A stretch of 64,000 nucleotides of DNA. Origin: Vitrella brassicaformis CCMP3155. Taxonomy: Eukaryota; Protista; Chromerida. The stretch lies in NCBI GenBank assembly GCA_001179505.1, contig CDMY01000254.1, forward strand, positions 83,632 to 147,631. The letters run 5' to 3'. A program made the translations under genes and the position numbers. This document shows positions 35,048 through 63,234 of this stretch, piece by piece. The notes under the pieces were generated by a model, which was not told where the DNA came from, ran no database searches, and worked only from the letters and a program-made list of their open reading frames with translations. The first letter of the stretch is position 1. Every line of letters begins with the position of its first letter.

Positions 35048-36378
35048 ATGAAAACGTCAGTGTCAGCACTGGTCGTTCTCACTGGCGTCGCCTCATTCCT
35101 TTTCTGGTTACGGACATCAGAAAAAGGTACGAAAGGATCTCCTGCTCAGCGCCTACTGTGGCTGCTGTGTGTGCTTTTCTCTGCTTGTCTCCGGCCAGTC
35201 ACCTTATCACGAACCTCGTTCCCAAGGCGATACCTCATCGACGACTACTGACCGTTGCGGTCGGGAGGTGAGAAGAGACAGGGACGAAAAAGACGGTTTC
35301 ATATAGGAGAGAGATGCTCACACAATTACTGCAGGGCAGGGTCGTGCCCTGAGAAGTGCCTGTTCATCCATCGTTATCTCCCGGAGTGGGTCAGGTAACA
35401 AGAGACAGGCTGCGAGTCGATATCCAAGGGTCTTTCGTTCAGATATCGGATTGTCGAATACGGTGACATCAGCGAATTGGAGAGTCAGCTCCAGCATGAC
35501 AGTACGGATGTCATCATCGTCGCAAGGAACACCTCTGACCTCTCCATCTCACGCCTTGGGGAGTGCGCTCAACGACGCAAAGAGAAAGGCTCGTCGGTTG
35601 GTCTCTACCACATGGCAGACATCGGCAACAGCGGCTTCGGGCGGGACTACGGCGAATTTGATTATGTGATACGGATGCACTACTTTTCTAGGCTGCGTCG
35701 TGCCGCTACAGGACTGTTTCTGTATTCCCTGTCGAATCTGACCTGCTCACGATCAAATGGACCTGATGGATGGCCGCCAGTATTGAAAGGTGACAAGGAC
35801 GACCGTTTCATCCCTAGACTGTCCACTGGCAGCTTCTGCCGCCTGGCTTTCCGGCCGACATGTACGACAGAGAAGGCTATTCAGCTTGGCCTGCTTCCAT
35901 GCGGAAATACGACTGCACATTCGTCGGCTGGCCAAGGACACACGGTAGCAGAATACTCTTGTCCGCGCTAAAGAAGCACCCTTTCGGCAGGCGGCTCAAG
36001 TGTCATTTATCTGTGCAGAGAAAGTTTAGACGAGAAATCGGGCCCTATTCTTACCAAGTTCACTACTTGTCCACAAGCAAGATCGGTTTCTGCCCAAGGG
36101 GAACAGGTCCTGAAACAATGCGTTTTGCTGAGGTCCTCGGCGCCGGAACAGTTCCTGCCATGCTGCCCTCGAACTTTCATTCGGTGACTTTTTCTCGATT
36201 TCCCGGCGTCATCGCAAGCTCGTGGCCGAAAGTGTTTGCGAAGATTGGCGAGCTCCTCAAGGATCCAGAGAGGCTAGACGAGGTCCAAGAGGAATGTGTG
36301 AAGTGGTACAGGAGACTGCGCGAGTGCGAAAGGGCCGGAATAGATGTGCTCCTGAGACACGCTTTGACGGACAAATGA
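35048..36378 (+). CDS. Exostosin-like glycosyltransferase (GT47-like), multi-exon
   Basis: Signal anchor MKTSVSALVVLTGVASFLFWL; FDYVIRMHY; SKIGFCPRGTGPETMRFAEVLGAGTVP...WPKV...LLKDPERLDEVQEECVKWY. Confidence 0.8.
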
Positions 36379-45924: not shown

Positions 45925-47420
45925 ATGAAAACGTCAGTGTCAGCAACAGTCGTTTTCACTGTCATTGCCTCATTCCTTCTCTGGTTGCTGATACGGACAT
46001 CAGAAAAAGGTATTTTCACACAACTCTGAATCCTGCATGGACTTGCAATGAATCAGGGGGACCCAACGACGAGGCCAAGACGACAATGGAAACACCGGCT
46101 GATCCGGCCCAAGATACCACACAAAATGCAATACAAACATCGCCCAAGTGTCCCACACATGCACTGATGCACAACAAGACTCAATCCCCTCCCTTTCTTC
46201 CCAGGCCGACAAGCCTCACGGTCGTGACGATTTACTTTCAGCTTCCAGGTGACTTCCAATACTGTTATGGTCATGTGTAGTATATCTGAGCGTGACAGAG
46301 TCAAAACACACAGTTGAAGAGTACTATAAATGAATGGAGCTCCTCCTGGCCGTCGAGCATCCCATGGTACAGCACTTCTCATGAATGCATACCGTGCTTC
46401 CATCACCAACAACTAATTGGGCCTTTCGACTCCCTCAGGTGATCTTTTGTGGGAAGTCATCGTACGAGGCCATCGAAAGGGCTCGGCGGCCCCTTCTTGG
46501 ACGGACGAGAATCCATGTGGTGGAATATGACGAGTTTCTCGTGGCCAAGCACCGGGAAGCCTTCGAGAAACAAAGGAAACTCCTCATGTGAGAAAACACC
46601 TGTCTCTTCTGTCTTTTGTCTGCCTCTCACTGTCTCTCTTCTCTTCGTACGTCTCACAACATGCCTCTTACCTATGTCATTCATACTGTGCGTCTCCGAA
46701 GGAAAAACGCCTTCCATGGCAAGAAGAGGATTCCATTTCGAAAAAACTACTCCGCCAGGCTATTCATGATCTGGTGACTAGTCTTTCTTTTATCTAGATG
46801 GTAACGTAACTGCGTCTCTCTTTCATATGCCTTCAGGAACGAGAAGATCAATTTCTTACATCGGGCAGCGTCCGAGAATCCGTTCAACACGAAGTTGTTT
46901 CTCTTCGCTGACATAGCTCTTTTGAGGTTCGTCTGTGCGGAAAAGAAGCAGAGACATGCCATGTTTCTTTCGGATGCATGTTTCCCCACATTGCTGGCCC
47001 GATAGGAAGCTGTCAGCAGAGGAGATGGCAAGTGGACGTTTCAAGAAGTGGCCAAATGCACAGAAGCTGGCAGAGGCGCCTCACGATAAGATGTTGCTCT
47101 TCCGAGTTGACCCGTTCAAGAAGAAATGGTCCCGGTGCAGAAGGCAGCGCTGCCTACCTTATTTTCGACCCTATTATAACAAGATCATCGCAGGCTCGAT
47201 GGGCGGAACTCAAGATGCCATCCAACGGTTTCACACAGAATACTACGCGATGCTCGCCTACTTCCTGCAGACCAAGCGGTGGGCTGGCCAGGAGCAGCAG
47301 ATCATTGACGCTGTCTGCCTGATTAATAGCGATATGTGCTACATTGTCGTGGCACCTCGAGGGAGATCTCAAGGAAGGAGCAGCTTCTTCCATTCTCTTG
47401 ACTATTTTATGCCTCCATGA
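45925..47420 (+). CDS. HtrL/YibB-like putative glycosyltransferase, type II membrane, multi-exon
   Basis: Signal anchor plus stem, LTVVTIYFQL, VIFCGKSSYEAIERAR...RTRIHVVEYDEF, NEKINFLHRAASENPFNTKLFLFADIALLR, IIAGSMGGTQDAIQRFHTEYY...AGQEQQII. Confidence 0.78.
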
Positions 47421-47425
47421 ATAGA

Positions 47426-47870
47426 TTTGTACGATAAACGCATTAATGCACAGACCAGTCTCTTCATAGCGAGCGTCTGTACAATCTATCAACATTGGCT
47501 CCTCACTCACTCTCTCACTCACTCACTCACTCCTCCTCCTCTTCCTCCTCGCTATCATCTACGGCCATCTCATCGGGCTGCTCTCAATCTGCCCCCTTGC
47601 CGACATGCAGGTAGTGCAGCCTCTCCATCTCCCGCCTGGGAGCGATGGCCATCTGCTTGGCCTCCTCGAAGCCGTACTTGTTGCAGGAGAAGGACTTGGT
47701 CTTCGTCTCGCCGCCTTGCCTCCATTGCGCCTGCCATGCGCCCGTTCTGTAGTGGACGCCCTTGACCCCGCTCTGGTGCTTAGCCGGCTCCCGCACAGAT
47801 GCCCGCCGCAACGCTCCATCTCGCGACGATGCTCCTCTGCCAACGCCTGACATACACATATACAGAGAGT
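47426..47870 (-). pseudogene. AP2-domain gene 3' fragment (end of one AP2 domain plus a full second AP2 domain), frameshifted, with in-frame TGA
   Basis: Intron acceptor then ALAEEHRREMER, frameshift, HQSGVKGVHYRTGAWQAQWRQGGETKTKSFSCNKYGFEEAKQMAIAPRREMERLHY...GAD*EQPDEMAVDDSEEEEEEE*. Confidence 0.85.
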
Positions 47871-48253
47871 CGCGGCGGTGGTTGTGTCGCGGCGGCGGCC
47901 AGCGTTGAGTCGTCCCATTCGCCCGTAGAACTATCATGTTGATACACAACAGAGAAGATGCCCTTCGCCTTTATGTTTTGTCGTGCTATATTTGCATTCA
48001 CCCCACCTCCTCGCGCCACTTGAGAAACCCCTCCTCTCAATCGCATCATGCGCAAATGGAACGCCTGCCTCCCCCTCTGGGTCCTCTGTAAAACAAACAC
48101 GAAGTGACCGTAAAACAAAAGGGGCGGCATGTCAATTTCTCACCGCGCTGCACAACGCGCGATAGGCCACATATACAACGGGCACATATACCATCCCTGT
48201 GAAAAAAGATATTGCACAAGTGCCGTGTATATGTGGCCGTTGTGGCTCCTCTC

Positions 48254-48574
48254 TCACCCCTGCACACGAGGCTGCACGTAGAGGTAGTAGAAGTCAGATA
48301 TGGCCATCCTTGCACACCTCTCGATCAGCCACCGCTGGCGCGGCATCTCCTCCTCCAGCCACCTCACGAGATTGACCGCATACTGCGACACATAATGCAG
48401 GAAGTCAGCGCAGGGAATGTCAAGCGCAATGCGTACCTTGAGCTGGTGGGACCTGACGAAGCGATCAAGCTCAGCCCACTCAATTCCTGCACACAAAACA
48501 TGGAGAGACTCCGACGTCGACTCCTTCGTCTTCAGTTGACCAGTCAGTGCAAAGGAGTGTGTGGCTATGCGCAC
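48254..48574 (-). CDS. Hypothetical exon or gene fragment
   Basis: Open frame after a TGTGCAG acceptor (IEWAELDRF...WLIERCARMAISDF), weak similarity to the ORF at 56492-56854, preceded by the shared ~50-bp motif. Confidence 0.3.
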   Translation of the reverse strand: MRIATHSFALTGQLKTKESTSESLHVLCAGIEWAELDRFVRSHQLKVRIALDIPCADFLHYVSQYAVNLVRWLEEEMPRQRWLIERCARMAISDFYYLYVQPRVQG

Positions 48575-48600
48575 GAGGGGGAAGAAGGAAGTCAGAGGAG
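48555..48600 (-). repeat. Dispersed ~50-bp motif, copy 2 of 3
   Basis: Reverse complement reads ctcctctgacttccttcttccccctcgtgcgcatagccacacactc. Confidence 0.75.
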
Positions 48601-49057
48601 TTGCTGACTGATTGACATGGGAATTTTACGTAAATGCATAACGGGCGAGAAAAAACTCACATATGACACCCCCTAACAGCTGTGAGGAATAGTCCGACAC
48701 AGGTAAACCGACTTAGGCATGGGGTATCGCTCTACATGAGTCAAGGCGGAGAGGGAGCTTGGAAAGGGAGACTGCGCGCTAGGGGGCGTGCCACGTGGAC
48801 GTCCCTCGTGTGGCTCAATGGGTGATTATTCGACCTTATCAGTGGTTCGACCTTATCGTGCCACGTGATCGTATGCACGACTTGTGGCTCGAAGAACTAA
48901 GTGGAGCTCTATCTGTCGTCGTGCTCCACTAGTCAAAGACATGAATCTCAGCTCGCAGCGCGGGCCGCGTTTTCTCCTCTACGAGGCTTTTTTCAAGGTT
49001 GAACAATTTCATGGGGCCCCTCCCTCAACAGTTGTTCCCATGTCCATTGAATTTACC

Positions 49058-50406
49058 ATGCGGCCCGGTCTCCCCCGTATGCGGCCGCCTCCTCGATTCT
49101 TTTTTGCCCATGTCAGCCTGGGATTCGTGCTGTGTTTGATCCTTGATGTCAGCGCCGTCTATTCGGCCATCAACATCTCTTACCCAGCGACGGACCTCTT
49201 GGCCAGGGTTCTGCGCTTGACGTCTAGCGACTTCTTTTCGGACGACTTTCGACGGCTATGGTGAGTTAAACATTTGTGCACAGCCGAACAGACGCTGCTC
49301 TCATCTTCTGAATGCTCCTTCAGCGAGCCTATCAATATAGCCCTGGCGACTACACGATCATATTTTCTCGGCACGACAGCAGCTATTGCATCCATTCTTG
49401 CACATTCACAAGATCCTGACAGGCTGCATTTCCACATTTTCGTACCACAAAGCTCTGCTGCCCTCTTGGAAGACGTCATAGAGTGCTCTCACGTTGCTGC
49501 CGACAAACTCGCACGAATCAGGATTCATCCCGTGGATATTGACATGAACCTCCCGGAGGTACATCAAAGCCCCGTCAGCATTGCACAGGGTGGCTCCCCC
49601 GCCTTGCACTTCAACTATCTGCGATTTTACCTCGGGGAGCTGCTTCCGAACATCACGGACTGTATTTGGCTTGACTCTGACGTTATCTTCCAAGATGCAA
49701 TCGAGAGGCTCCATGAAGAAGCATGGGGTATGATGTCACATTTCCAATTGTCACTTGTACGAGATGGGGACCACGAAACGTGCGAGGACAAGGAGGACCG
49801 TGACGGCTCAGGATGGCGGCATTCAACTAATGCGAGCCAGGAGGTGCCTTCTTGGATTCCCCTCTCGGATGTTCGCAGCTTTCCTGCAGCCTTTGCAATA
49901 CCGGCCCCACCCGACCCGTTCCCTCTCTCTCATGCGCTCAACGCTCGAGGCAAATCTGTCCTCACGGGATTGAGAATCAGCCCAAGACACGCACTTCTGC
50001 TCAACCCAGGGGTCTTCGTGGCAAATTTGACATTATGCCGCAAGCTCCGCGTTTCGAAAAAGTTTGAGCAGGTGATCAATACTTTGCGAGAGAATGATGC
50101 TGGTCAAGGGCCAGGGATGCACTACAACGAGAGTATCAGAGAGTCTGCAAACCTGCCCTTCTCTCTGTTGGCTCAACGCGTGGGTTGGGCCCCGCTGTCA
50201 CACAACTGGAACGTGCTCTGGGCAGGTGTGGAGACACGCAGCCGCCAGTGAACGATTCAAGAAGGAGTGCTGTGTATGCAGGCCAGAAGAGCTATTACAT
50301 GAATAATCTGCACAGGGCGCATGTACTAAACTACTCAGGCCCAGTCAAGCCTTGGACATGGCTAACGAGAAATGCGGTTCTGTGCACGGATCAAACAGGA
50401 CAATAA
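49058..50406 (+). CDS. GT8 glycosyltransferase (GATL-like), paralog of the gene at 33538-34896
   Basis: Signal anchor, INIALATTRSYFLGTTAAIASILAHS...LHFHIF, NYLRFYLGELLP...IWLDSDV (DxD), LNPGVFVANL, NLPFSLLA, WN, VLNYSGPVKPW. Confidence 0.9.
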
Positions 50407-51010
50407 ACCTGAGATTCGTACTTTTTTTAGAGGCTTTTCAAGCAGTACACTATATCCAAGCAATGTCTCGCAGGTCTGCAAATGTATCGTTTGTCTCCCG
50501 GTATTTATCTGTTAACAACTTGCTTTGCGCAGACAGGGAGGAGTCGGAGAACGACTCAAGGCAAGCGTTCCACTATGTGCCTTCGTTTCGTTTCTACGCT
50601 CGCTGTTCATCTGTCGGAGACGCGGAATCGCAATTCTGTGAGATCAACCAAACCGTCAGTCAATCCCTACAGCGAAAAGCACAGTACATGGTAAAAAGCG
50701 TTGACCAGACGACCGTGGAAGTGTCTCCTCCGTAGACATGGTTTCGTTTGTTGTCTCAGGAGCTTAGTCTGCAGAGGATTGAACGAATTGCCATGAAATT
50801 CGTTTGGAAGAAATGACGTTACAATCATTTTACGAGAGTGATCAATAGATGCAAATGGCTGAGTGTCAACACATACGAGAATTCATACGACAAAGACAGA
50901 CATTGATACAAGAAAGGCCCCTGAAGTCGACGCTAGTTTCCACATCCAGACAACACACAGACTGCCACGACACACACACACACACACACTACATCACCCC
51001 ACGATGTGCA

Positions 51011-52379
51011 CTATTGCTCTACATACTTATACGTCCCCCACAGGTCCCACCACGTCTTAACCAGCGAAGATCGCATAGACGGTTTCAAATACTGGCATCC
51101 ATCATCATACGTCTCAAGAGGTGGCCCGTCAGAAGCGCTGCGCCAGCAAGCACGCCGCAACCACGCGTACTTGTGTCTCCTTGTGCGGCTCTTGACGAAG
51201 TTTGTCCAACTATTCGGACCACTCCACGGCTTGACACCACCCTTGTAGTGCAAAATGACAGGTCGCCAGGACGGGTCATCCTTGAGTTTGCCATTGATTG
51301 CTTCAAGGTCTACAGGAACGACCAAAAGACATTATGAGCACAGGCAGACATCGACACAGCTCGTTACCCTCCGAGCCCACAAAGACATTATATTCCATAG
51401 GCAGCTCACGAAAGCTTCCATTGAAGAAAAAATTGAGTGCGGTCTGGTCGTCGAATCCCCACTGACGGTTCCATCCGCCAATCGTGGATGAGGCATTCGA
51501 GCACCGGAGCGCTGGCAGACTCATTAACAAGACGCCTGCTATGTAGAAAGAAAGTGTCGTTTGAAAAATCGCCGTGAGCCGCACACCTGGGTTGAATGTC
51601 TTGCTGCCTCCCTTCCACATAATCTTGTCTTTCAGTCCTCCTGTTTCCAGCCATTTGTCGACAGATCCCTCGGTGCTCTCGACATGTCGCGGCTTAGCCG
51701 CAATGGCTTCGTCAGGTCCCAGTGGCATGACGAACAAAGGCTCGAGGGAGCCATTCACGATGACATCGTAGTCGAGGTAAAGGACTTTTGCGACAGAAAG
51801 AGGTAGCAGGGCAGGCAACAAGATGCGGATGTTCGTCGCGCTCGTGATGGGGGCTTCGCCGGTGCTGACGTCGTTGCGTCGCATTGCCGCACCGACTCGA
51901 TTGCTTCGGAAAGTCAGAAAAGCACCTTCAAGTTGAGTGAAGTTGATCAGGTGCAACTGCAAAGAGGGCCACCTTCTCCTGGACACGGCTTCGTCCTCAA
52001 GCACGATGATTGTTGGGTGATGAGAAGGGACGTCCATCGTCACAAGATGGACATCAACGCACCCCGTCACTGCCGTGTCGCGATGGTTGACGTGCAGTGA
52101 GTTGAGGAGCGTCGGAATGGGCTGAAGGCCAGCATCATCCACCCCGAGTGCTATGTGGGCCCTACGGTCACCACAGGCCTGGTCCGTTGCAGTTCTGCCC
52201 TGTGCTCGCGCCATGCACTCGCGAAAGGCGTTGCTTCTAGAGCTTCCATTCACCCAAGGAGATTGCGACGAAAGCTCCAACAGCTGACGGCCAGGCGGGT
52301 GGAACGGAGGAATGAACTGCGCCAGGAGAAAGAAAGCCGCCAACGATGTAACGCAACAAACGAAACGAAGGTAGGTCAT
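51011..52379 (-). CDS. GT8 glycosyltransferase (LgtC/RfaJ-type DQ motif)
   Basis: Signal anchor, HIALGVDD...LLNSL, NIRILLPALLPLSVAKVLYLDYDVIV (DxD), FNPGV|LLMSL, DDQTALNFFFNG...LPMEYN, ILHYKGGVKPW. Confidence 0.92.
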
Positions 52380-52613
52380 GAGTCCAAAACATGGGTCACA
52401 TTTTCCCCTTCCACAGGATATCACGACTGATACGCGATTGCAACCCTAACTCGTGCACGTACTTTTCTGATCGTTATCGTCCGGGAGACACGAGTCAAAC
52501 ACATAACCAGCTAAGCGGCCTTTCTCCCAATACCCGCGGCGAGGCCGCCTCGCCTCCCCGCGAGCATTAACCACTGCCCACGGTCCTTTCCGGCCACTGA
52601 TGTAGAAGACGTC

Positions 52614-54561
52614 CTATCGTTTCTGTCTTTCGCAGACGACTTGCTTTAGCCAAAGTTCAAGCATTGCCATGTCACTTGCGTCGCCCGACTGCAGATTCAT
52701 ATGATACATGAAGTGGTGTCGGAGAAGGAGCAAATCGTGTTGCTTCTGCATCACTTCAGCCACAGACATATTCAAAAGTATCTCCCTAGTCTTCCTTACA
52801 TCCGCCTCCCGAACCAGCACAGCGAGAGTCGTCCAGTCCCAGAAGCATCCCTGTGGCATCCAGTAGTCATCAGCCAGCACGACTGGGATGCAGCCGAAGA
52901 ACATCGCCTCCATCAGCCTAGGGCTCCAGCCTCTCCATCCCCTCGGACACAGACAGAAAATAGAATTTCGTAGTCCGCTCTCATACTCTCGCCGCCTGAA
53001 CTTGTGCTGGACGACAAACGACCCGGGCGTATCTTGAAAGATCTTGACAAGGTCAGCACGCACAGTATTTCTTATCTTTCCCGCGAAGAAAACGAAATAG
53101 CGCCGACCAGTGGCTTGAAGCAACGTAGAGACCGTTGATGCAGACGAGTGCTTATATTCTGGCCCGATGATCGGTCCTGTGACGTCTCTAAGTGCTCTCG
53201 CTGCAAGCATGATGTTACCTGACAGGCTAATGGAGACATCGCGGCGCGGATCGAAACTACACCATAATGTGAACACAGCCGGGATACAAAAAGGGGAACA
53301 TCCATAATGTGATTTCAATGAGGCCGCACTTCCACAGCTGACATGTACGGCGGCTTATAGGGGATCTTGATCGGCTTACTCGACGACCAGGACTTGAATC
53401 TCTCCACGTTGTGCATCTATTCAGGATGGATTGGACAATATGTCTCAATCCGATGCTACGGACTACCTTACCGTTTCATACTCATGTCTCTTAACCAGGT
53501 CAGCAGTGCATGTGAGTACACTGCCGTTATGGACAAAGACGGGGTCAGCAAACGCGAGAAAGTCTGCTCGTCCACCGTCGTGGGATGTTGTCAAAAAATG
53601 CAATCGCCCTTTTGAACGGTTGAAGTAGGGAAATTGCTTCGTGATGTCCTCGATCGTTTTCCTTATGTCTTCTGCGCTCCGCCAGACGTCAAAGTTCGGA
53701 ACAGTCAAATCTGGCATGAAGTGAGCCAGCAACTGATTCCAATGGACTCTGAGATCATTGCGGTGCGCGAAGGTGGCTGTGGTCGGGAAGACAGGCAAGG
53801 CAAACAGAGCATCGGTTTCTTCAGGCAATGCTGTTTCCGACGGTAAAACCGCGAAGTTGGGCAACTGCTGCATGTTTGACCTGTGCAAGATGCATCATAC
53901 TTATCGCGACAGTGTGGGTCAATGTTCATATAATGCGTGGTGGGCCGACTGACCAGATGATGCGCTCCGTCTGATACCCTGTCAGCAATGGACAGAATAG
54001 AAAATCACTGGCAGAATGTGGTCATGTGTTACCCGGATTTCCTGACGCTCTGAGAATCTGTCGAACCGACAGGAATTCAGGAATCATCCTGAAGTCTGCA
54101 AATTAGAACCACACTGAAAGTGGATACGCCTCTGCAAGGCATGTACCTGTGGTGGTTATCGGATATTGATACACAGTGAGATTGCAGTGCATTTCGTTTA
54201 GAAGGTCCGCCACCAATTCGTCCATATGTGACAAACCGCGTCCCTTTGCATTCTTCCCGCCGAAATGCCTCGTTGTCGCAACGAAGTCCGGCACACCATT
54301 AGACCTCAAAGGGTGAAGGAGGCATTGGCAAAGTTGTTCAACTTCGCTCCTCTCAGGCTGAGTCTCTTTCCTCCTACGCGCCAGGCATCTCACGTTTGTC
54401 CCGTGGAAGTCGTTCCCAAGAAGCAAGGCCAAATTCAAGATATCATTTGATAGGCGCATCTCGAAAATGAGCTCCTTCACGACGCCTCGCACGACCAGAA
54501 AGACAACGACAGCGGCCAAACTGACCCCAAGCAACAAGCGGAACTTCACTCTCATCACCAT
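52614..54561 (-). CDS. Exostosin-family glycosyltransferase (GT47), multi-exon
   Basis: Signal anchor, LTVYQYP, FPYFNRSKGRLHFLTTSHDGG, FDPRRDVSI, RRYFVFFAG, RNSIFCLCPRGWRGWSPRLMEAMFFGCIPVVLADDYWMP...DW. Confidence 0.93.
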
Positions 54562-54779
54562 GAATCAATGCAGCACCCTGAGTTTCAGCCAGCGTTTCCA
54601 TCGACATGAGGACTCCACATGGAGACAAAATCCGGTTGTTTTAGGGGAAGCGGCCGTAAAAGCGCGAGGGGGATTCGTTGCTACCTTGGTGAATGGGGTG
54701 AACCCCGAGCATTCAGTCGGCAAAGACCAGAAAAATCACCCGGGAGAAGGGAAAAGGCAATGCAGGCAGGAATCGCAAC

Positions 54780-55983
54780 ATGCCTGTGCTCTCCTTGTTT
54801 GTGATTTTTTTGGTATTGGCACTGCTCGCCACGTCCCTCTTCTTCGCGGTTCAATCACCCGAATGTGTGACTCTGACGCTGGGAGACAGCCATGGCTTTG
54901 CAGTCAGCTGCGACGGCACACAGCCCTCGATACCGCGACAGGTAATGCAGCATCGCAGCCATTGGTCCCCAGAAATAGTAGCTCTGTTGTGCAGGTCTTT
55001 CTCACAACAAAAGACAAAGCAACAATGAGAACGTGGGAAAGAAAGAACATAAAGAAGTGCAAGAGTGTGAATCCCGGATGGGCTTTTAACTTGTACAACG
55101 ACACGGAGATTAATGACTACGTGCAAGAAAGATTTCCTGAGATGATGGATGTGTGGGGATTCTTTCGGAACAGTGTCGAGAAGACGGTAGGAGTATGGCA
55201 TAATTATCACGCAGTAGGTGGCACTACTGGCAATGCGACGATCTGAGCAGGACTTTTGGCGATATCTAATTGTCTACGACTACGGAGGATTATACATGGA
55301 CACCGACATCGATTGTCGCCGCCCCATTGACGAGTTGATAGTCAACAAGAGCATTAGAGGTCAGTACTGAGAAGCAGAAGAGGAAGAAGAGGAGCCGTCT
55401 TGTTGATGCGTCACAAATGCGCTTTTGCAGGCCTTGTTGGTCTGGAGAACGTGCAAGAAGGGGATGACGTAGTGCAATTTGCGCAGGTCCAACTCTCGCT
55501 CGTTTGCCCGAGGATCGCAACCTTTTGTCTCATTTTGAACTGCAGTACAGTTTTGCCTTCGCCCCACGACATGTAGTTCCACTGTGGACCCTCAAGGAGA
55601 TACGCAACAAAGTGCAGGCAATCAAGGTATCGGGCTCTTCAGATGTGTACGCCCTCAACCTTACAGGACCCATCATATGGACGAGCGCTATTTTGCAGTA
55701 TATGAGTGTCTTTGGCATGGGTAAGGCGGCAACCTTCCAACGGGGGGATCACCTTGTCGGCGACATGCAGCTGCTGGACATCAATCGATTTGGCGCGATG
55801 AAAGGGCGGTCAATTGCGACGCGTGACTGCAAGCATCCCGACATCTATATGATCCATCAATTTGCCGGAAGCTGGGTTGCCAAGTACAGAGGGTACACAG
55901 ACGAGCAGATGGCAGACGGAGGGAAACAGACACGATCAAGCAGTCGAAACAACTGGAGACCCCGTTGCGCGGACAATCGGTGA
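54780..55983 (+). CDS. GT32 (OCH1-like, DxD sugar-binding) glycosyltransferase, multi-exon
   Basis: Signal anchor, SIPRQ|VFLT, SVNPGWAFNLYND, EKT|DFWRYLIVYDYGGLYMDTDIDCRRPID, LQYSFAFAPRH, LTGPIIWT, MIHQFAGSW. Confidence 0.92.
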
Positions 55984-56208
55984 GGGCAACAACATCTGTG
56001 TCTAGCCACAAGGCAAATCGAGCTGCCGGAGGAAGACCGGTCATGTAAAATATTAAGCTGATTGATTGTGTGGAGAACTGGACGGTTGCAGGAGAATGGG
56101 GTCGGGCATGTGTTTTCAGCACACAAAAGACTTTTCTTTGTCCTTTCACTTGAATGTGACCTCGTCGGGAGACACTGGCATATTGGTAACATCGGATGGG
56201 CAACGCTT

Positions 56209-56854
56209 TCAGGGGATCGGCAATAAGACGTGCGAAAGGGCCTGACGAAAGTGAATCGAAGCAGTGGAATTCAGATTCTTTGAACCAGTGTGAATCACAA
56301 ATGTGTGACATCGACATTTTCTCGGCCATGCCGGGTGTGGGTCTACGCACTGTTTGGTGTTCACGCAAAAAGGAGACGGTATTGTTGATATTGTCGCGTG
56401 AGACGAATTTTTTACCTGGAAGCATTTGTCTCCTTTTTGCGTGAGACATACGGAGGCGCATCGGTTGGGACGACGATACGGACATGTCAGATTACAAGTT
56501 TGCCAGCCAAGAGGAGGCCGCGAGGTGAATGCAGCGGTGCATCAGGGGCTGGACTTTTTGTCCCCCAGAGACGGCTGGCCAGACAGGAAGCAATTGTGTG
56601 TTGCACTCCAGCCAGAGAGACTTGATCCGCAAAGCCGATGGGTCTACATTCAGTGTCAGCTCAGTCGGTAGGGTCCGTAGATTCATCAAACACTTCCCGG
56701 TATTGTCTGCTGACAGAGAGGATATAGATATGGCTATTGAGATGGCTATTGAGATGGCTGTTGAGTATAGGGAGTGCGCGAGAGGAGGTGCGTTCGTTAG
56801 AGCTCGCCGCTGAGGCAGCAAAGGCCCAGGCCTTGTTGGAAGTGGAGAAATCAT
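56209..56854 (-). pseudogene. Chimeric or partial duplicate locus: unrelated upstream exon plus a copy of the GT34 last intron and terminal exon
   Basis: About 56165-56420 is homologous to about 57010-57255. Terminal exon reads CVDPHPAWPRKCRCHTFVIHTGSKNL...LLPIP*. The upstream ORF has a 12-bp tandem repeat (AISI x3) and no GT34 core. Confidence 0.45.
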
Positions 56855-56903
56855 GAGTGTGTGGCTATGCGTACGAGGGGGAAGAAGAGGAAGTCAGAAG
56901 AGT
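56855..56903 (-). repeat. Dispersed ~50-bp motif, copy 3 of 3, directly upstream of an ATG
   Basis: Reverse complement reads ctcttctgacttcctcttcttccccctcgtacgcatagccacacactc-ATG. Confidence 0.75.
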
Positions 56904-57055
56904 CGTTGCTTACAGAGGACAATTAGTAGTTGACTGATTGACTGGTTGTGGCGAGCATAGAATCGGGTGACACTGATTGAGCTAGGAGAGGGGGTTAGAA
57001 TTCAGGCGGTCGTTGGGAGACACTGCATGTACATTAAAAAATGCATCTCAGTGGA

Positions 57056-58480
57056 TCACATGGGCAACAAGACATGCCCAAGATTCTGACGAAAGTCCAG
57101 CAGAGCTTTGGACTGCAGATTCTTTGAACCAGCGTGAATCACAAATGTGTGACATCGGCACTTTCTCCGCCATGCCGGGTGTGGGTCTACGCACTGTTGG
57201 CGTCACAAGGAAAAGATTTATCGTTGCGTGATATCGAGGTCTTAACTTACCTGGAGAAGAGTTGCCTGTGACGGACCATTATCGACAGCAAGCAAGAATG
57301 GGACAGTTTTAAAATCTTGTAGCCTTTGCTGTCTTCGCCCGATGCAGTAGAATGCGCGGTGACAGTGATACCACCGAATATCAGCACTTTTAGCACTTCT
57401 CCAGCATTCGTTGTCCTTCAATTTTCTGTGAATGCAGGCGTCGTTGTACGAGAAGCTGCCGTTCGCATACGCTTGGAAGGCGTGTTGAATGGCATGCTGG
57501 AGTGACGTCTGCTCAGCCGGATGCCGCTGGAAGAAATGTCCATCGTCCCAGGCCCGAGTCAGAACCATGTCTGTCCACTTTCCTTTCCTTCTGAAGATCA
57601 TGACACCTGCGACGGAAGGCAGAGAAAGGCAAAGGCGGGTCATATGGACAAATGAAAGGCGGTACCGGTATTCAGCCATGAGTCCTTCTGCACAATGAGT
57701 TGAACATTAGAGAGCACCTGAGGTTCCCGGGCGATTAAGTCACTGTAAGCGGTGTAGAGTCGAGGCGAAAAGAAGTCTGTGACAAGAAGATTGTAATCTT
57801 TGACAAAGGCGTCACTATCCATCCACAGCACAGTGGAATACGCCTTCAGTAGACGGCGAATAAGCAATATCTGAAAAAGAAGTGTGTGGAACGTATGAAG
57901 GCACAAGAATTCAAAGGCTACCTTTACATAGTACACCGATCTCCCTTCCAGGTTGGAGTGACTGCTATCTTGGACAAATAGAGGAATATTTCGTAGGTGA
58001 GCATAAAGTGCGATATTAAAGATGCAGTCGAGACATGCCAGGTTGATCAAAGTGGCATTTTTGGCGCCAAATAGAAACTGCACATATACAGACACCCACA
58101 CACTCGCCCGTCGGATTCCCTCTTGCACTATGGTTCATTCTGTATGTTACGTTCCAGGCCGTGGCCATGACCACAGACGGCGACTCTGTTATTGCCTCAA
58201 TTTTCGCCCCTCGGCGACTCAATGTTCGCAATGCCAGTGCCAGCGTATCGCCCTCGAAATAGACTCTGTAGGTCTCGCAAGGCTCCTGTCTTGTCTTGAT
58301 ATGAGAGGTGACATGAATGTCCGCAGCGAGATCTGTCTCATTCCCTCGCAGCCTGCAAATGAGGGGGCACGGGTCGTCTAGTTGCTGTTGAGTCTTCGGA
58401 GGAAGAGGAAACGAGTCGAACGGGAAGAAGAGGAGACGAATCATAGAAGAAGAACGGCTGCGACGATGACGAGACTCCAC
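57056..58480 (-). CDS. GT34 (GMA12/MNN10-like) glycosyltransferase, multi-exon; N-terminus unresolved
   Basis: NIALYAHLRNIPL, YYVK...IRRLLKAYSTVLWMDSDAFV (DxD), LIVQKDSWLNT|AGVMIFR...WTDMVLTRAW...EQTSLQ, terminal FVIHAGSK. Confidence 0.82.
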
Positions 58481-59492
58481 CAGAGTGTGTGCACGGGATT
58501 AACGGAAAGCGCGTCAGCACGAGGAGTCCGTCAAGAATGCAAACTAAAAACTAGCTAGCTGTCCCTTCCATTCAATCACTGCAAGCATGCCAAATGTAAC
58601 CCTCTGCCCGACCACCCACCGAGTCCGTCATAGATCATCAACCCTTGACATATAGAGTGCACATAAGTGATGCCCCTGGGGAAGTGGCCGTCAACCAGAT
58701 GTTCAAACGACGACGCACAAAGGGACTCCACCAGACCATCTTCATTTTGTTTCTTCCCTGAACGCTGAATGTGAAATAGTTCAGAGACCTCGAGTCTGAA
58801 CCCCATCTCAAATGGCAACGGCCCATCCACGGCTGACCGACGAGGCCCTCTGTACTGAGGAATTTACATTGACAGTGCAAATTCGCAGGGGCCGTTGTCC
58901 GCGGAACCCAATGCGGCGGCGTGACTGCCCGACGAATGCAAACAAGTACAAGCGATGCAGCTGCAGAAACACGTACTTCTAGCGTTCTTCTGACAGAATT
59001 GCGCAGGAGTCGGCGAGTCGCCCCCCATGTCGGCCATCTCGGTGATGCATGATCTGATTGCCCAGATGCTGAAATATCTCTTCCAATGCAGGCATGCTGT
59101 TCCAGCCTGCCGGCACATCAGCGTTCAGCCGGGTGCCGAAAAGAAGTGATCTTCCGGCAATGTCCGTGCACTTTCCCTTCTAACGATCACAACGCCTGCC
59201 AGGACAACAGAAGGGAAGCGGCTCATTGACAACAGAAAGGCCATGCCCTTCTGAACTTTCCCGCGTAACTCAATCAGGATTGGTGCACAGCAGAGGAGCT
59301 CGAAATTCTTGATCTATCTCGAGCATGGCTCAGACACAATGTGCCAGAGCCAGTGGTTTCGCGGGGAGAGAAATCAATCCGTCAATTCTCTCTCTCTGAC
59401 GGAGAGACGATGTTCTGAGGAGGGTGCCGTCAGCCACGAGATAAAAGAAGGGCCGTCAGCGGCGAGACTTCGCGCCCAGCGGTCAGCCGCGC

Positions 59493-60380
59493 ATGGTTCG
59501 TGGACTTGTCATTGCGTCTCTGGCTTCCGTATCCCTTTGGGTCATTGCAATGACTCGTTTCCATTTTCACGGTGGCCGACACTGTCCTGAGGACGCCAGT
59601 GCCGGGGGAAGACTGCTTTCGCTGGCTAGCCACCCAGCCAAGCAAATCAGTGGTATGCATGAATGCCTGTGGATTCTTGTAGACCAGCTCCAACGCCACA
59701 TCCAAACGCTGCCCATTCTCGCACACCGGAACCAGCTTGGTGCGATGCTTCAAAGGCTGGATAACATGGAAGTCGGTGCTGAGATTGGAGTACAGCAGGG
59801 CCACTTCTCCAAGATTACACTGAGCCGCTGGTCCAAGGCGAAGATGTATTATCTCATTGACGTCTGGCTCAAAACAAGACGCCAGCTATGGAGGCACGGG
59901 GTTCGGTGACCAGGCTAACAGGGATGACCAGACACAAGAGAGATTCTATCGAGAAGCCCAAGCCGCTCTGTCTCGCTATGAGAACAAAACGGTGTTCATC
60001 AGGGACTTCTCCACCGAGGCGGCAAAGCAGATTCCGGACGGCTCGCTAGACTATGTGTACATCGACGCTCGCCACGATTTCTGTTCGGTATATCAGGACC
60101 TGACGACTTATTGGCGCAAGGTTCGTGACGAGGGAATCATGGCCGGCCATGACTACGATTCGTTGCCGAGATGGAGCACATGCCCGAATGGGACGGTGGA
60201 GCCGTCCGCTGTGAAAGGGGCGGTGAATAAATTTGTGACAGAGAAGGGTGTATCTTCAAGTATGAGGCTGACGGTGAAAAGGAGTACCGATCGTGGTACT
60301 TCCGGAAGCCTGCCATTCATACAGTCGAAGATCTTCCCTCTTCATCCCGCAGGCTTTTAAGAAGTCACTGCGGACTCTGA
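59493..60380 (+). pseudogene. Methyltransf_24-like SAM methyltransferase with signal anchor, split by two apparent frameshifts
   Basis: GAEIGVQQGHFS...YYLIDVW / QDASY...QERFYREA...RDFSTEAA...SLDYVYIDARHDFCSVYQDLTTYWRKVRDEGIMAGHDY...AVKGAVNKF / IFKYEADGEKEYRSWYFRKP, read across three frames. Confidence 0.78.
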
Positions 60381-61304
60381 AGACAGTGCCCGTCTACTCA
60401 TCGAAGAGGCTATCCTGGTCCGAGGAGTACCATCCATCCATCAGTGATATTCATCGGCCTTTCTATCGGGGAGGCAGCGATACCACACAGAATGGACGCA
60501 TGTCTCCGTTGTGCTCCAATGGGAGCCGGTTCAATGACCAATGTCTCAGTGCTCTCGAAGATAGAAAAGGATTGTTTCCGGAAATGAGACTGGATACGGA
60601 AATGCAACTGGATGTCCTTGCAGACAATGGACAAAATTCTTGCTGTCCCTGTGCAGCGAATGTCTGTCTATCTTGTGATTACTCGCCATTCCGTGCGTGC
60701 ATGGATGGGTGTGTGCTTTTGAGGTAGTTTGTATTTCCCCAGATCGACAACTTCGCAACACGCCACGCAACACGAAAGAAACGACAGGCACACGCACCAC
60801 GCCCTACGCTCTTCCCTCTATATCTCTTCACTCCCCTGTTTGGGATGTCTTAAAAAATGGATCGACGGCAGGACATGTTGAAAGACCCTCTCCGCATGTC
60901 TGTGATGCCGATTTCGGCCTGCCGAGGGGAAAGTGGAGTAACGTCCCGTTTGTTAAGAACACGCTTTCAAGCAGTGCACGGAGCAGTGCTGGTAATCACG
61001 AGTCGAGCAAGCGACATCTGAACAGCATCCGTACACGTCATCTTCTTCCCATCTGGCCTTTCTCTTGGCTGTCGTCTGTATTTGCTTGGTCTGAGTCGGG
61101 TGATTCGACATCATTGTCGTCTGCATTTGCTTTGCTCCGTGGTGTTGCAGTCGTTCAATGATGGGCACAGTAGTAATTTCGACGTCCACCGGGTGTTTGT
61201 CCGATTGACCAGAGCTGTCGACAGCGGCCAGCCAGATTAGCCACCGAGTTGGCATGTCTTGACAAGACACGGTTTGACCAGCGCAGGCCGAGGAGCGGGG
61301 GAAG

Positions 61305-61460
61305 GAAGAAGAAGAAGAAGAAAACAACAACAACAACAAGAACAACAAACAAACAAACAAACACACAAAAACAAAACAAAACAAAACAACAACAACAAAA
61401 AAACACAGACACACAAACACACAAACACACAAACACACAAACACACAAGCACACAAACAC
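61305..61460. repeat. Low-complexity AAG/AAC/ACAAAC simple-repeat tract next to gap 3
   Basis: Direct inspection of the sequence. Confidence 0.8.
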
Positions 61461-61558
61461 ACATGGAGGGGTTTTGGGGGATGGTGATGCGACGGGTGGT
61501 CCCGACTTTGTGTCTTTCCGGGACCGAAAAGAAGAAAAAATCCGGCATATGCACCCCC

Positions 61559-61858
61559 NNNNNNNNNNNNNNNNNNNNNNNNNNNNNNNNNNNNNNNNNN
61601 NNNNNNNNNNNNNNNNNNNNNNNNNNNNNNNNNNNNNNNNNNNNNNNNNNNNNNNNNNNNNNNNNNNNNNNNNNNNNNNNNNNNNNNNNNNNNNNNNNNN
61701 NNNNNNNNNNNNNNNNNNNNNNNNNNNNNNNNNNNNNNNNNNNNNNNNNNNNNNNNNNNNNNNNNNNNNNNNNNNNNNNNNNNNNNNNNNNNNNNNNNNN
61801 NNNNNNNNNNNNNNNNNNNNNNNNNNNNNNNNNNNNNNNNNNNNNNNNNNNNNNNNNN
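61559..61858. other. Assembly gap (300 N)
   Basis: N run flanked by C homopolymers. Confidence 1.
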
Positions 61859-62003
61859 CCCCCCCCCCCCCCCCAAAAAAAAGAAAAAAGCCTGCGGAAT
61901 TTTCCCGTTCTTATTGATTTTTCTTGGATGCATATGCACTGAATCCCTCTTCGGACTGGTAAAGCGATCATCAGTGTAATTTCCATTTGCCGTAGACTTC
62001 AGG

Positions 62004-62757
62004 ATGATCTCTGAACTCGTCTCGGTCCAAAAGCGTGTCCTTCTTTCTCTATTGCTGGTATTTCGCGGCGCCTACTCGTCAGCGGCGGGCTGCGGTGATG
62101 ATGCCCTGACTGATCTCTTCCCACCCTTCCGTGCGAGTGCTTCCAACAGATCTATCGAGCCGGCAGTGCTTGCAGCAACACTCGAGAGGGCGGAAATCCA
62201 GTCTGGCCAGCGAGAGGCGATTGACTGGCTCACAGCGGCCGCCCGCGGCAACGTCTCGCGCCCACTGCACGCTACGTCTTTTGCGGCCTTTCTCACTCAT
62301 GTTCTCGCTTCCAACACTGTCATGACGCCACACAGGGATGAACTGCCGCTGTCAATGAAGGCGATAGACCTCATCAAGGCGCATCTGCCACTGCGTGACC
62401 TCCTGACATCTGAATCATCCTCAATATTGTTCAGGTGACACAGAACGACAACATACAGGAGCGTCAGACGGTCTTGCTCCTTTTTCTCTCTGTTTCCTGT
62501 TGCTGGGTTGCAGCATGCTGGTGCACTTACGTTCTGCGGTTGATGCGGCCGGCCTGGAGAAGGGAGATGCGTCGTGTCAGCCGATGGGCAATTCTAGTTG
62601 GTCGTTTCCGTTTGACGCATTAGCAGGGCGGTGGAAGAAGAGGAAGTTCTTTTCCATCAAGGAGCATGGCTTCGAGGAGGCCAAGCAGATGGCCATCGCT
62701 CCCAGGCGGGAGATGGAGAGGCTGCACTACCTGCATGTCGGCAAGGGGGCAGATTGA
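62004..62757 (+). CDS. Putative chimeric ORF: signal peptide and unknown domain spliced in frame to a truncated AP2 C-terminus
   Basis: MISELVSVQKRVLLSLLLVFRGAYSSAAG...ILFS; the phase-2 donor at about 62435 and acceptor at about 62513 give ...WKKRKFFSIKEHGFEEAKQMAIAPRREMERLHYLHVGKGAD*. Confidence 0.55.
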
Positions 62758-62915
62758 GAGCAGCCCGATGAGATGGCCGTAGATGATAGCGAGGAGGAAG
62801 AGGAGGAGGAGTGAGTGAGTGAGAGAGTGAGTGAGTGAGCCCATGTTGATAGATTGTACAGACGCTCGCTATGAAGAGACTGGTCTGTGCATTAATGCGT
62901 TTATCGTACAAAAAA
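62668..62915 (+). repeat. Near-identical inverted copy of 47426-47673 (AP2 C-terminus, acidic tail, 3' UTR-like sequence)
   Basis: About 245 nt matches from ggcttcgaggaggcc to tttatcgtacaaa, differing mainly in the GAGT repeat. Followed by an A6 run. Confidence 0.93.
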
Positions 62916-62922
62916 GCGGGAT

Positions 62923-63234
62923 GTGTCGTTGCGGTTCACGACGTGGTACCAGATGATTCGGAGAGACTTTCCCAACTTTCTGCCGCTCGTCGCTCACGTC
63001 GCTACAACGAGGTTCTTTCTTGAGGGCGAAGTCCTTCAAGACACGGGTACTTCAGTGTGGACCCCTTGGTTCTCTTACTTCTCTTCCCTCTCTTCTCCCC
63101 CCTTGTACTGTGTCTACGCACACCTGCCTCTGAATCGAACCTTTGCGACCCACCATTTTGAGCCAGGAGAGCATTCCTCGGGCGCGCCCCACATGGATGC
63201 AATTCCCCTGATGTACGGTTGTAAAATTCGGTAG
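62923..63234 (+). pseudogene. C-terminal fragment of a plant AT5G12260/AT5G60700-like putative glycosyltransferase
   Basis: FTTWY...P....T..F...SVWTPWFSYF...YCVYAHLPLNRTFATHHFEPGEH resembles the family motifs IWTPWFIKF and STNHMEPGAH (recalled, not searched). No 5' exons are visible because the AP2 copy abuts it. Confidence 0.55.

What the first reader, a model, noticed from the sequence alone, without database searches (positions are those of the whole stretch)
45925..63234. Dense, non-paralogous glycan-biosynthesis gene cluster in a protist genome
In about 17 kb, nearly every intact or decayed gene encodes a Golgi-type (signal-anchored) glycan enzyme from a different family: HtrL-like, GT8, a second GT8 subtype, GT47, GT32, GT34, Methyltransf_24 and an AT5G12260-like GT. 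The whole 64 kb adds two more GT47, GT10, GT90, another GT8 and two more SAM methyltransferases. Tandem duplication does not explain it because the families are unrelated. The mix of GTs and secretory-pathway methyltransferases suggests a pathway for a branched, O-methylated surface or cell-wall glycan, organised like an operon-like biosynthetic cluster. Motifs are seen in sequence, family roles are established knowledge, and the shared pathway is inference.
Basis: partly seen in the sequence, partly recalled or inferred. Interest (0 to 1): 0.82.

Follow-up and report, generated by a model that had tools for sequence, protein, structure and literature searches.

The report
Mixed glycosyltransferase gene island in Vitrella
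The coral-associated alga Vitrella brassicaformis has five or six unrelated sugar-chain-building enzyme genes side by side at a scaffold end, mixed with broken copies and transcription-factor gene fragments, but nothing yet shows that they build one product together.

Summary
The window is the last 64 kb of Vitrella brassicaformis CCMP3155 scaffold CDMY01000254.1.

**Confirmed above Pfam's own cut-offs, within about 14 kb (46.4-60.4 kb):**
- HtrL_YibB
- Two unrelated GT8 subtypes
- GT47
- GT32
- Methyltransf_24

**Not established:**
- "GT34" is only a DxD-bearing GT-A-like orphan.
- The "AT5G12260-like GT" has no support. The only annotated gene there is an AP2 fragment.

**State of the genes:**
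- Methyltransf_24 carries a frameshift and shows no spliced RNA.
- Three of the eight annotated genes are not glycan enzymes.
- GT32 is spliced and expressed in three RNA runs. It sits head-to-head with GT47, about 30-90 nt apart.

**Arrangement:** Genes lie on both strands as separate mRNAs, so this is not operon-like. All-against-all comparison confirms the families are not paralogous.

**Context elsewhere:**
- Close paralogs of one GT8 sit on other scaffolds outside such clusters.
- No orthologous neighbourhood was found.

**Assembly gap:** It lies in low-complexity intergenic DNA. It affects only the AP2 piece to its right.

The scan has already noted several similar multi-family glycosyltransferase neighbourhoods on other DNA of this genome.

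**Verdict:** this is a real, non-random GT island. A single shared pathway remains unproven.

The parts
45925..46009 (+). Signal-anchor first exon (28 codons plus 1 nt, beginning MKTSVSATVVFTVIASFLLWLLI). It ends at the donor AAG|GTA. Near-identical copies head a gene at about 2.5 kb (-) and a GT47-like gene at about 35.05 kb (+).
   Evidence: Self-blastn gives 95% identity over 210 nt to 2532-2323 and 85% to 35039-35129. Translations are and the conserved donor. Use by the HtrL-like gene is untested. A direct join to the annotated exon-2 acceptor is not in frame.
46364..47420 (+). HtrL_YibB-like gene (annotated protein P0010, 242 aa). The annotated N-terminus is doubtful: a 3-nt first exon, and the Pfam match starts at profile position 41.
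   Evidence: No relative other than itself was found.
47584..48046 (-). AP2-domain gene (128 aa). It is not a glycan enzyme. Its 3' end is repeated, inverted, at 62623-62912.
48254..48639 (-). Annotated 69-aa gene with no family.
49040..50248 (+). GT8-B, a second GT8 subtype with a DSD motif. No protein is on record for it. It has an anchor exon and a canonical in-frame 63-nt GT..AG intron (49261-49323) that holds the only stop codon. It looks intact.
   Evidence: Pfam 53.9 bits, translation, intron, 27-42% identity to the GT8 at 33.5-34.9 kb. No gene is listed here. Expression was not tested.
51011..52379 (-). GT8-A (P0001, 364 aa, annotated from 52214). An in-frame upstream ATG at 52379 adds a signal anchor. 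DYD motif.
52614..54561 (-). GT47 exostosin-type gene (P0005, 419 aa, annotated from 54192). An in-frame upstream ATG at 54561 adds a signal anchor. RNA contigs reach 54605-54624.
54653..56178 (+). GT32 (Gly_transf_sug) mRNA. The CDS is open from ATG 54780 to the stop at 55980. It has a signal anchor, a DTD motif and four GT..AG introns (54939-54991, 55186-55249, 55358-55428, 55483-55541). It lies head-to-head with GT47.
   Evidence: Spliced contigs in three RNA runs from two studies, exon-wise translation, Pfam 43.7 bits on exon 3, annotated protein with PF04488.
55784..56491 (-). Relic ORF with 'LWLDTDVV'. It is a partial tandem duplicate of the GT34-like gene and lies antisense in the GT32 3' region.
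   Evidence: Translation. 52% identity over 67 aa to 57051-57278. DNA repeat 57060-57198 / 56216-56354 at 85%. No Pfam hit.
57056..58134 (-). GT-A-like DxD gene ('WMDSDAFV', 'NTGVMIFR'). It is annotated as 189 aa starting at the M inside the DxD motif. GT34 membership is not established.
   Evidence: RNA support comes from run X1 only, and the longest laid contig carries 7 mismatches.
58485..58693 (.). Dispersed high-copy repeat just upstream of the GT-A-like gene.
   Evidence: DNA run depth is about 10-20 times that of the neighbouring bins, with very high RNA depth and loose ends on both sides. No Rfam family.
59493..60357 (+). Methyltransf_24 gene remnant. It keeps a signal anchor and the SAM-binding motif, but the reading frame shifts by one base at an A-run near 59866-59872.
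   Evidence: Pfam 45.2 bits and the frames. It is collinear and unspliced in the DNA run and in run X1 only. It is not annotated.
61559..61858 (.). Assembly gap in low-complexity intergenic DNA.
62322..62757 (+). AP2-like gene fragment (118 aa, weak AP2). 62623-62912 is a 93% inverted copy of 47426-47719.

Best explanation
This is a genuine glycosyltransferase-rich island at the end of a Vitrella brassicaformis scaffold.

**Members.** Five apparently intact, mutually unrelated glycan-enzyme genes lie here: HtrL_YibB-like, GT8-B, GT8-A, GT47 and GT32. There is also one orphan GT-A-like gene. They sit within about 12 kb, mixed with decayed copies (a frameshifted Methyltransf_24 and a relic of the GT-A-like gene), AP2 gene fragments and a dispersed repeat.

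**How it is expressed.** Each gene is its own monocistronic, intron-bearing unit, and most encode an N-terminal signal anchor. Co-regulation is most likely local, not cluster-wide. GT47 and GT32 diverge from one promoter region of under 100 nt, and GT8-A follows GT47 in tandem.

**Likely function (inferred).** The products are Golgi type II enzymes that add different sugars to wall-matrix or surface glycans.

**Likely origin (inferred).** The island grew by local birth-and-death and module shuffling. Three unrelated genes of the window share one anchor exon.

**What it is not.** It is one of several such mixed GT neighbourhoods in this genome. It is not an operon, and it is not shown to be a single-pathway cluster.
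For: - **Identity and annotation.** GCA_001179505.1 scaffold CDMY01000254.1; the window end is the scaffold end.
- **Families.**
- **Non-paralogy.**
- **Anchors and DxD motifs** read from the sequence.
- **GT32 expression.** It is spliced in three RNA runs. GT47 transcripts end at 54605-54629 and GT32 transcripts start at 54653-54699. The GT32/GT47 contig depth ratio is 2.0, 2.2 and 2.2 in the three runs, which the tool itself calls a poor measure.
- **Decay and turnover.** Methyltransf_24 frameshift, relic duplicate, AP2 inverted repeat, high-copy repeat, gap.
- **Shared anchor exon.**
- **Chance placement is unlikely unless GT genes are very common.** Four GT genes in a row would be expected 0.004 times per genome at a 2% GT frequency. 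Six or more of 10 would be expected 0.0003 times.
- **Similar neighbourhoods** were noted elsewhere in this genome by the scan. These are leads only.
- **Plant-like wall linkages.** The wall of the sister chromerid Chromera has xyloglucan-, xylan- and galactan-like linkages (PMC9293442).
Against: - The genome-wide GT frequency was not measured. With the strictest count (4 Pfam-confirmed GTs among 8 annotated genes) and a frequency of 3% or more, such a run is expected by chance about once per genome.
- Expression was examined only for 54.4-60.4 kb and only from contigs. HtrL-like, GT8-B and GT8-A were not examined directly.
- No localisation or activity data exist.
- HtrL_YibB has no known activity (PMC4172580).
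- No ortholog or conserved neighbourhood was found.
Confidence: 0.6

Rival explanations
1. This is a dedicated biosynthetic gene cluster. The neighbours act in sequence on one branched, O-methylated wall or surface glycan and are kept together by selection for co-regulation.
For: - Unrelated families lie adjacent.
- GT47 and GT32 share a promoter region and keep a stable depth ratio.
- The families are those used for plant matrix polysaccharides (GT8, GT47, GT34-like). This rests on established knowledge of these families.
- Chromera wall linkages fit such polymers.
- Mixed GT neighbourhoods recur in this genome (leads only).
Against: - The methyltransferase is frameshifted and shows no spliced RNA.
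- The GT34-like gene is barely seen in RNA.
- AP2 genes and an orphan gene interrupt the run.
- Neither GT8-A paralog sits among a run of GT families, and the nearest named GT47 relative sits next to non-GT genes.
- No conserved neighbourhood was found.
Confidence: 0.17
2. The neighbourhood has no functional meaning. A repeat-prone scaffold end accumulated fast-evolving, lineage-specific GT genes by insertion, partial duplication and exon capture. The adjacency is a by-product.
For: - Scaffold end, gap, high-copy repeat, inverted AP2 fragments and two decayed genes.
- The anchor exon is shared at 95% nucleotide identity, including about 125 nt past the splice donor, which suggests recent recombination.
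- Members have almost no relatives outside Vitrella.
Against: - Accretion alone does not explain why the inserted genes are so often glycan enzymes.
- Five members keep open frames, anchors and DxD motifs.
- GT32 and GT47 are clearly expressed.
Confidence: 0.2
3. This is an artefact or foreign DNA: a mis-assembly that joins separate loci, or an inserted giant-virus or bacterial glycan locus.
For: - A gap and fragmented short DNA contigs across 56-58.7 kb.
- HtrL_YibB and Methyltransf_24 are mainly bacterial families.
- The atlas neighbours of the GT-A-like exon are viral clusters.
Against: - DNA contigs of an independent-looking run tile 54.4-60.4 kb without breaks.
- Logan contigs from other runs carry the same ORFs.
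- The genes have host-type 53-71-nt GT..AG introns.
- GC content matches the flanks.
- No viral hallmark family appears in any ORF scan.
Confidence: 0.03

Closest known systems
Aspergillus fumigatus galactosaminogalactan cluster (five co-regulated genes; PMC4817252)
   Same: It is a eukaryotic, non-paralogous neighbourhood of glycan-building and glycan-modifying genes.
   Different: The fungal cluster has proven co-regulation, a known product and conservation across fungi, and it contains one glycosyltransferase. Here there are five or six GT-type families, no known product, no conservation, and decayed members.
Bacterial polysaccharide loci (O-antigen, LOS outer-core, capsule), which also hold HtrL_YibB genes (PMC4172580)
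   Same: Several unrelated GT families lie side by side with sugar-modifying enzymes such as methyltransferases. HtrL_YibB and Methyltransf_24 are typical members of such loci.
   Different: Those loci are operons with co-directional genes, sugar-nucleotide synthesis genes and flippase/polymerase genes. Here the genes are spliced, lie on both strands, are separately transcribed and signal-anchored, and no transporter or precursor gene was recognised.
Plant Golgi matrix-polysaccharide enzymes (GT8 GAUT/GUX, GT47 MUR3/IRX10, GT34 XXT); from established knowledge of these families
   Same: The same CAZy families and the same type II membrane topology.
   Different: In plants these genes are dispersed in the genome. 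The Vitrella proteins are very divergent (35% identity to the nearest named GT47), so donor and acceptor sugars cannot be inferred.
Other mixed GT neighbourhoods in the Vitrella genome noted by this scan (s1-233269, s1-226914, s1-218579, s1-231158, s1-231044)
   Same: The same genome and the same pattern: unrelated GT families side by side, sometimes sharing N-terminal modules.
   Different: Those loci hold other family sets (GT43, GT14-like, GT25-like, pyruvyltransferases). They are AI notes that I did not re-test.

Membership tests
Eukaryotic non-paralogous biosynthetic gene cluster | Three or more adjacent genes for unrelated enzymes of one type of metabolism | tested here: met
   HtrL_YibB, GT8-B, GT8-A, GT47 and GT32 lie within 46.4-56.0 kb. 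The only similarity found is between the DxD relic ORF and the GT-A-like gene; GT8-B matches only a GT8 outside the region.
Eukaryotic non-paralogous biosynthetic gene cluster | Co-expression of the members | tested here: inconclusive
   GT47 and GT32 share a promoter region and keep a contig depth ratio of about 2 in three runs. The GT-A-like gene and Methyltransf_24 are not seen in two of the three runs.
Eukaryotic non-paralogous biosynthetic gene cluster | Members act in one pathway or on one product | not testable with these tools
   This needs glycan chemistry and genetics.
Eukaryotic non-paralogous biosynthetic gene cluster | Neighbourhood conserved in relatives or repeated with paralogs | tested here: not met
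   GT8-A paralogs at 63% and 47% identity lie on other scaffolds outside such a multi-family run; one of them has a GT_PLOD gene about 9 kb away. The GT47 relative in Cymbomonas has non-GT neighbours. No other relatives with flanks were found. Search sensitivity was limited.
Operon | Co-directional genes on one polycistronic transcript | tested here: not met
   The gene strands run + - - + - - + - +. GT32 has its own spliced mRNA, divergent from GT47.
GT8 | Pfam Glyco_transf_8 above the cut-off, with a DxD motif | tested here: met
   GT8-A scores 92 bits with 'DYD'. GT8-B scores 53.9 bits with 'DSD'.
GT47 | Pfam Exostosin_GT47 above the cut-off | tested here: met
   P0005 scores 115.9 bits.
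GT32 | Pfam Gly_transf_sug with a DXD motif, above the cut-off | tested here: met
   Exon 3 scores 43.7 bits and holds 'YMDTDIDC'.
GT34 | Pfam Glyco_transf_34 above the cut-off, or significant similarity to members | tested here: inconclusive
   12.3 bits against a cut-off of 23. The atlas lead is 0.93 with few shared features. There is no PDB hit and no hit among the representatives. The exons could not be joined for a search.
HtrL_YibB | Pfam PF09612 above the cut-off | tested here: met
   38.1 bits against 24.1. The family has no known activity, so calling it a 'glycan enzyme' is inference from its bacterial gene context.
Methyltransf_24 | Pfam match and an intact reading frame | tested here: not met
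   The Pfam match scores 45.2 bits, but the frame shifts by one base between the SAM-binding part and the rest.
AT5G12260-like glycosyltransferase | Any detectable similarity to a GT family at 61980-63234 | tested here: not met
   No Pfam hit except AP2. The atlas shows nothing related. The annotated gene is a weak AP2 gene.
Golgi type II membrane protein | A single N-terminal hydrophobic anchor ahead of the catalytic domain | tested here: met
   Seen in the sequence for GT8-A, GT8-B, GT47, GT32 and Methyltransf_24. Actual localisation cannot be tested here.

The most novel reading that the evidence does not exclude
Vitrella may organise much of its Golgi glycan machinery in mixed-family glycosyltransferase islands. 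In this reading the islands grow by local shuffling of anchor and stem exons onto captured catalytic domains, some of them of bacterial type (HtrL_YibB, Methyltransf_24, LPS-like GT8). Divergent promoter pairs would co-regulate neighbours. This would be a eukaryotic counterpart of bacterial polysaccharide loci, and a mechanism for inventing new wall glycans quickly.
Probability: 0.2. Interest if true: 0.8.

Novelty: new variant of a known kind. Interest (0 to 1): 0.5.

Why it matters
Clusters of unrelated metabolic genes are well known in fungi and plants. Clusters made of several Golgi glycosyltransferase families are not described for alveolates. My searches of the held papers found nothing on glycosyltransferase clustering in Vitrella.

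If the neighbours are functionally coupled, gene position could be used to assign partners and products to dozens of orphan glycosyltransferases. These belong to the closest photosynthetic relatives of apicomplexan parasites, whose wall chemistry is barely known.

If they are not coupled, the island is still a compact case of how new signal-anchored enzymes arise and decay.

Tried and rejected
**Look-ups and scans that gave little:**
- Exact-product look-ups of guessed single-exon genes failed or returned only short Logan contigs.
- Exon-by-exon Pfam scans missed GT32 and HtrL until the right small exon or the annotated protein was used.

**The GT34-like exon:**
- phmmer against 1.84 billion representatives gave nothing.
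- PDB sequence searches gave nothing.

**The HtrL-like protein:**
- The PDB sequence search gave only chance-level hits.
- AlphaFold2 without an alignment gave pLDDT 37.7, which is unusable, so no fold search was run.

**Background and relatives:**
- The supplements of the chromerid genome paper hold no Pfam or GT counts, so no genome-wide background could be taken from them.
- A JGI metagenome scan for GT47 relatives found none.
- The ENA relative's contig holds only the GT47 gene.

**Hypotheses considered and rejected:**
- Operon. The genes lie on both strands as separate spliced mRNAs.
- Viral or bacterial insert. The introns and base composition are host-like, and there are no viral hallmark genes.
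- Tandem duplication. There is no similarity between the families.

Exons were read and searched piece by piece, by reference.

Full report
**Where this is.** A search with the GT8 ORF returned an identical-exon protein of Vitrella brassicaformis CCMP3155 (P0001). Its gene lies on scaffold CDMY01000254.1 of GCA_001179505.1 (147,631 nt). Mapping of P0001, P0005 and P0010, together with a second locus fetch, places window position w at record position 83,631 + w. The window therefore ends exactly at the scaffold end. Logan contigs from other runs carry the same ORFs.

**The gap, tested first.** The Ns at 61559-61858 are preceded by CA/AAC microsatellites and followed by poly-C and poly-A.
- No recognised ORF reaches the gap.
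- The last family-bearing ORF to its left ends at 60357. The next ORF starts at 61980.
- Continuity across the gap is unknown.

**What the genes are.** I scanned all stop-to-stop ORFs of 62 aa or more in 45.5-63.6 kb against Pfam. I added the annotated proteins and one small exon. Scores above the curated cut-offs were found for:
- HtrL_YibB: P0010, 46364-47420 (+), 38.1 bits.
- GT8-B: 49265-50248 (+), 53.9 bits.
- GT8-A: P0001, 51011-52214 (-), 92 bits.
- GT47: P0005, 52614-54192 (-), 115.9 bits.
- GT32 (Gly_transf_sug): exon ORF 55218-55367 (+), 43.7 bits.
- Methyltransf_24: 59824-60357 (+), 45.2 bits.

The public annotation lists eight genes inside the finding: HtrL-like, AP2 (128 aa), a 69-aa orphan, GT8-A, GT47, GT32, a 189-aa protein without Pfam, and a weak AP2 gene (118 aa). 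No gene is on record between 57.8 and 62.3 kb, and none for GT8-B.

**Claims that did not hold.**
- *GT34.* The 189-aa gene (57056-57822, -) is annotated from the methionine inside 'WMDSDAFV', so the model is truncated. Read exon by exon, using splice joints from run X1, it looks like a GT-A enzyme ('WMDSD', 'NTGVMIFR').
  - GT34 gets only E = 0.15 and a weak language-model lead.
  - PDB gave nothing, and so did 1.84 billion representatives.
- *AT5G12260-like.* Nothing supports it. The annotated gene there is an AP2 fragment.
- *Wider window.* GT90 and a second extra methyltransferase were not found among ORFs of 100 aa or more.
  - Confirmed: GT10 (83 bits), a third GT8 and Methyltransf_11.
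  - The GT47-like ORF at 35.8-36.4 kb is sub-threshold.
  - The window also holds ordinary genes: DEAD helicase, PRPP synthetase, Myb, signal peptide peptidase, NOMO1-like and Mem_trans.

**Intact or decayed.**
- *GT8-B looks intact.* The single in-frame stop at 49262-49264 lies in a canonical 63-nt GT..AG intron. The upstream exon encodes a hydrophobic anchor starting at ATG 49040.
- *GT8-A and GT47 are annotated from internal methionines.* In-frame upstream ATGs at 52379 and 54561 add signal anchors. RNA contigs extend past 54561.
- *GT32 is fully supported.* Spliced contigs in three RNA runs from two studies give four GT..AG introns. The frame is open from ATG 54780 to 55980, with an anchor and 'YMDTDIDC'.
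- *Methyltransf_24 is broken.* The SAM-binding part and the remainder lie in frames one base apart, at an A-run near 59866-59872. Both the DNA run and the only RNA-like contig are collinear with the assembly. Two of the three RNA runs have no coverage there.
- *A relic of the GT-A-like gene.* ORF 55784-56491 (-), with 'LWLDTDVV', is a partial tandem duplicate of that gene. It lies antisense in the GT32 3' region.
- *A dispersed high-copy repeat* sits at 58485-58693.

**Is it more than chance, and is it paralogy?**
- All-against-all blastp of ORFs shows no similarity among HtrL-like, GT8-A, GT47, GT32, the GT-A-like gene and Methyltransf_24.
- GT8-B resembles only the GT8 at 33.5-34.9 kb.
- The genome-wide GT frequency could not be obtained, so I computed binomial expectations over a range of frequencies for 22,817 genes (gene count from PMC4501334).

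| Count used | GT frequency | Expected runs per genome |
|---|---|---|
| Four GT genes in a row | 2% | 0.004 |
| Six or more of 10 | 2% | 0.0003 |
| Four or more of 8 annotated (strictest) | 2% | 0.24 |
| Four or more of 8 annotated (strictest) | 3% | 1.2 |

The island is therefore very probably non-random, but the strength of that statement depends on a number I could not measure.

Earlier notes of this scan list several other mixed-family GT neighbourhoods on other DNA of this genome. These are leads that I did not re-test. They suggest a genome-wide habit rather than a one-off.

**Organisation and likely working.**
- Strands alternate, and each gene has its own introns, so this is not operon-like.
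- GT47 transcripts end at 54605-54629 and GT32 transcripts start at 54653-54699. This points to a divergent promoter region of under 100 nt.
- The GT32/GT47 contig depth ratio is 2.0, 2.2 and 2.2 in the three runs. The tool warns that contig depth is a poor measure, so this is only a hint.
- Head-to-head pairing is generally enriched in chromerid genomes (PMC4501334).
- Three unrelated genes of the window share a near-identical signal-anchor first exon ending at the same donor: 45925-46009, about 2.5 kb (-) and about 35.05 kb (+). The 95% nucleotide identity runs on about 125 nt past the splice donor, which suggests recent exchange.
- A shared anchor could also place the enzymes in the same compartment. 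That is inference.
- Whether the 45925 exon belongs to the HtrL-like gene is untested. A direct join to the annotated acceptor is out of frame. The annotated 3-nt first exon and the Pfam match starting at profile position 41 both suggest missing 5' exons.

**Conservation.**
- GT8-A has two Vitrella paralogs (63% and 47% identity) on other scaffolds. One is the only GT among seven genes. The other has a GT_PLOD gene 9 kb away and a GH28 gene next door.
- GT47 has a roughly 50%-identical relative on a 2.6-kb ENA metagenome contig that holds only that gene.
- The nearest named GT47 relative, in Cymbomonas, has unrelated neighbours.
- HtrL-like has no relative but itself at this search's sensitivity.
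- The JGI metagenome scan found nothing.
- No conserved neighbourhood was therefore seen, but the searches reach only fairly close relatives.

**Context from papers.**
- The wall of the sister chromerid Chromera velia is mostly cellulose, with minor linkages read as xyloglucan, xylan, galactan and mannan (PMC9293442). This fits a need for GT8-, GT47- and GT34-type enzymes but links none of these genes to a polymer.
- HtrL_YibB is an uncharacterised family found in bacterial lipooligosaccharide loci (PMC4172580).
- The closest described eukaryotic analogue is the five-gene galactosaminogalactan cluster of Aspergillus fumigatus (PMC4817252).

**Verdict.**
This is a real glycan-enzyme island with at least one divergent co-transcribed pair.
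- It is not operon-like. Its methyltransferase is decayed. A single shared pathway is unproven.
- It is best seen as one of several mixed GT islands in Vitrella, shaped by local birth-and-death and exon sharing.

**Limits.**
- RNA was laid only on 54400-60399.
- Run kinds were guessed by the tool. I inferred that X1, X2 and X8 are RNA from their GT..AG joints.

Noticed in passing
window 58485-58693: A dispersed repeat of about 200 nt. DNA-run depth is roughly 10-20 times that of neighbouring bins, and RNA contig depth is very high (up to about 4,900 in run X8), with loose ends on both sides. It has no Rfam family.
   Followed up: partly
window 47426-47719 and 62623-62912: A 93% inverted repeat covers the 3' end and downstream flank of two AP2-type genes. 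The two copies bracket the block holding GT8-B, GT8-A, GT47, GT32, the GT-A-like gene and Methyltransf_24. The right copy lies beyond the assembly gap, so its position is unverified.
   Followed up: partly
window 45925-46009, 2448-2532 (-), 35048-35129 (+): Three genes with unrelated catalytic domains share one signal-anchor first exon that ends at the same donor (AAG|GTA). They are a methyltransferase-GT77 fusion, a GT47-like gene and probably the HtrL-like gene. The first two copies stay 95% identical about 125 nt past the splice donor.
   Followed up: partly
window 52215-52379 and 54193-54561: The public models of GT8-A and GT47 start at internal methionines. In-frame upstream ATGs would add the missing signal anchors, and RNA contigs cover the GT47 one.
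   Followed up: partly
window 56189-57448: A 390-nt contig in run X1 has 7 mismatches and a non-canonical 858-nt skip (56189 to 57048, with 5 extra letters). It probably comes from a further paralog of the GT-A-like gene elsewhere in the genome.
   Followed up: no
window 33541-36375: A second pair of adjacent unrelated GT genes on opposite strands, apparently head-to-head: GT8 (-) and a GT47/RXYLT1-like gene (+). The first GT8-domain exon and the GT47-like gene's anchor exon lie about 200 nt apart.
   Followed up: no
window 37017-42246 and 43164-45414: A 1,401-aa NOMO1-like gene and a Mem_trans (auxin-efflux-carrier-type) gene lie directly left of the island. Neither is a glycosyltransferase.
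   Followed up: no
window 23374-23673 and 24538-24837: Two further 300-N assembly gaps lie in the lower-GC stretch at 22-26 kb.
   Followed up: no
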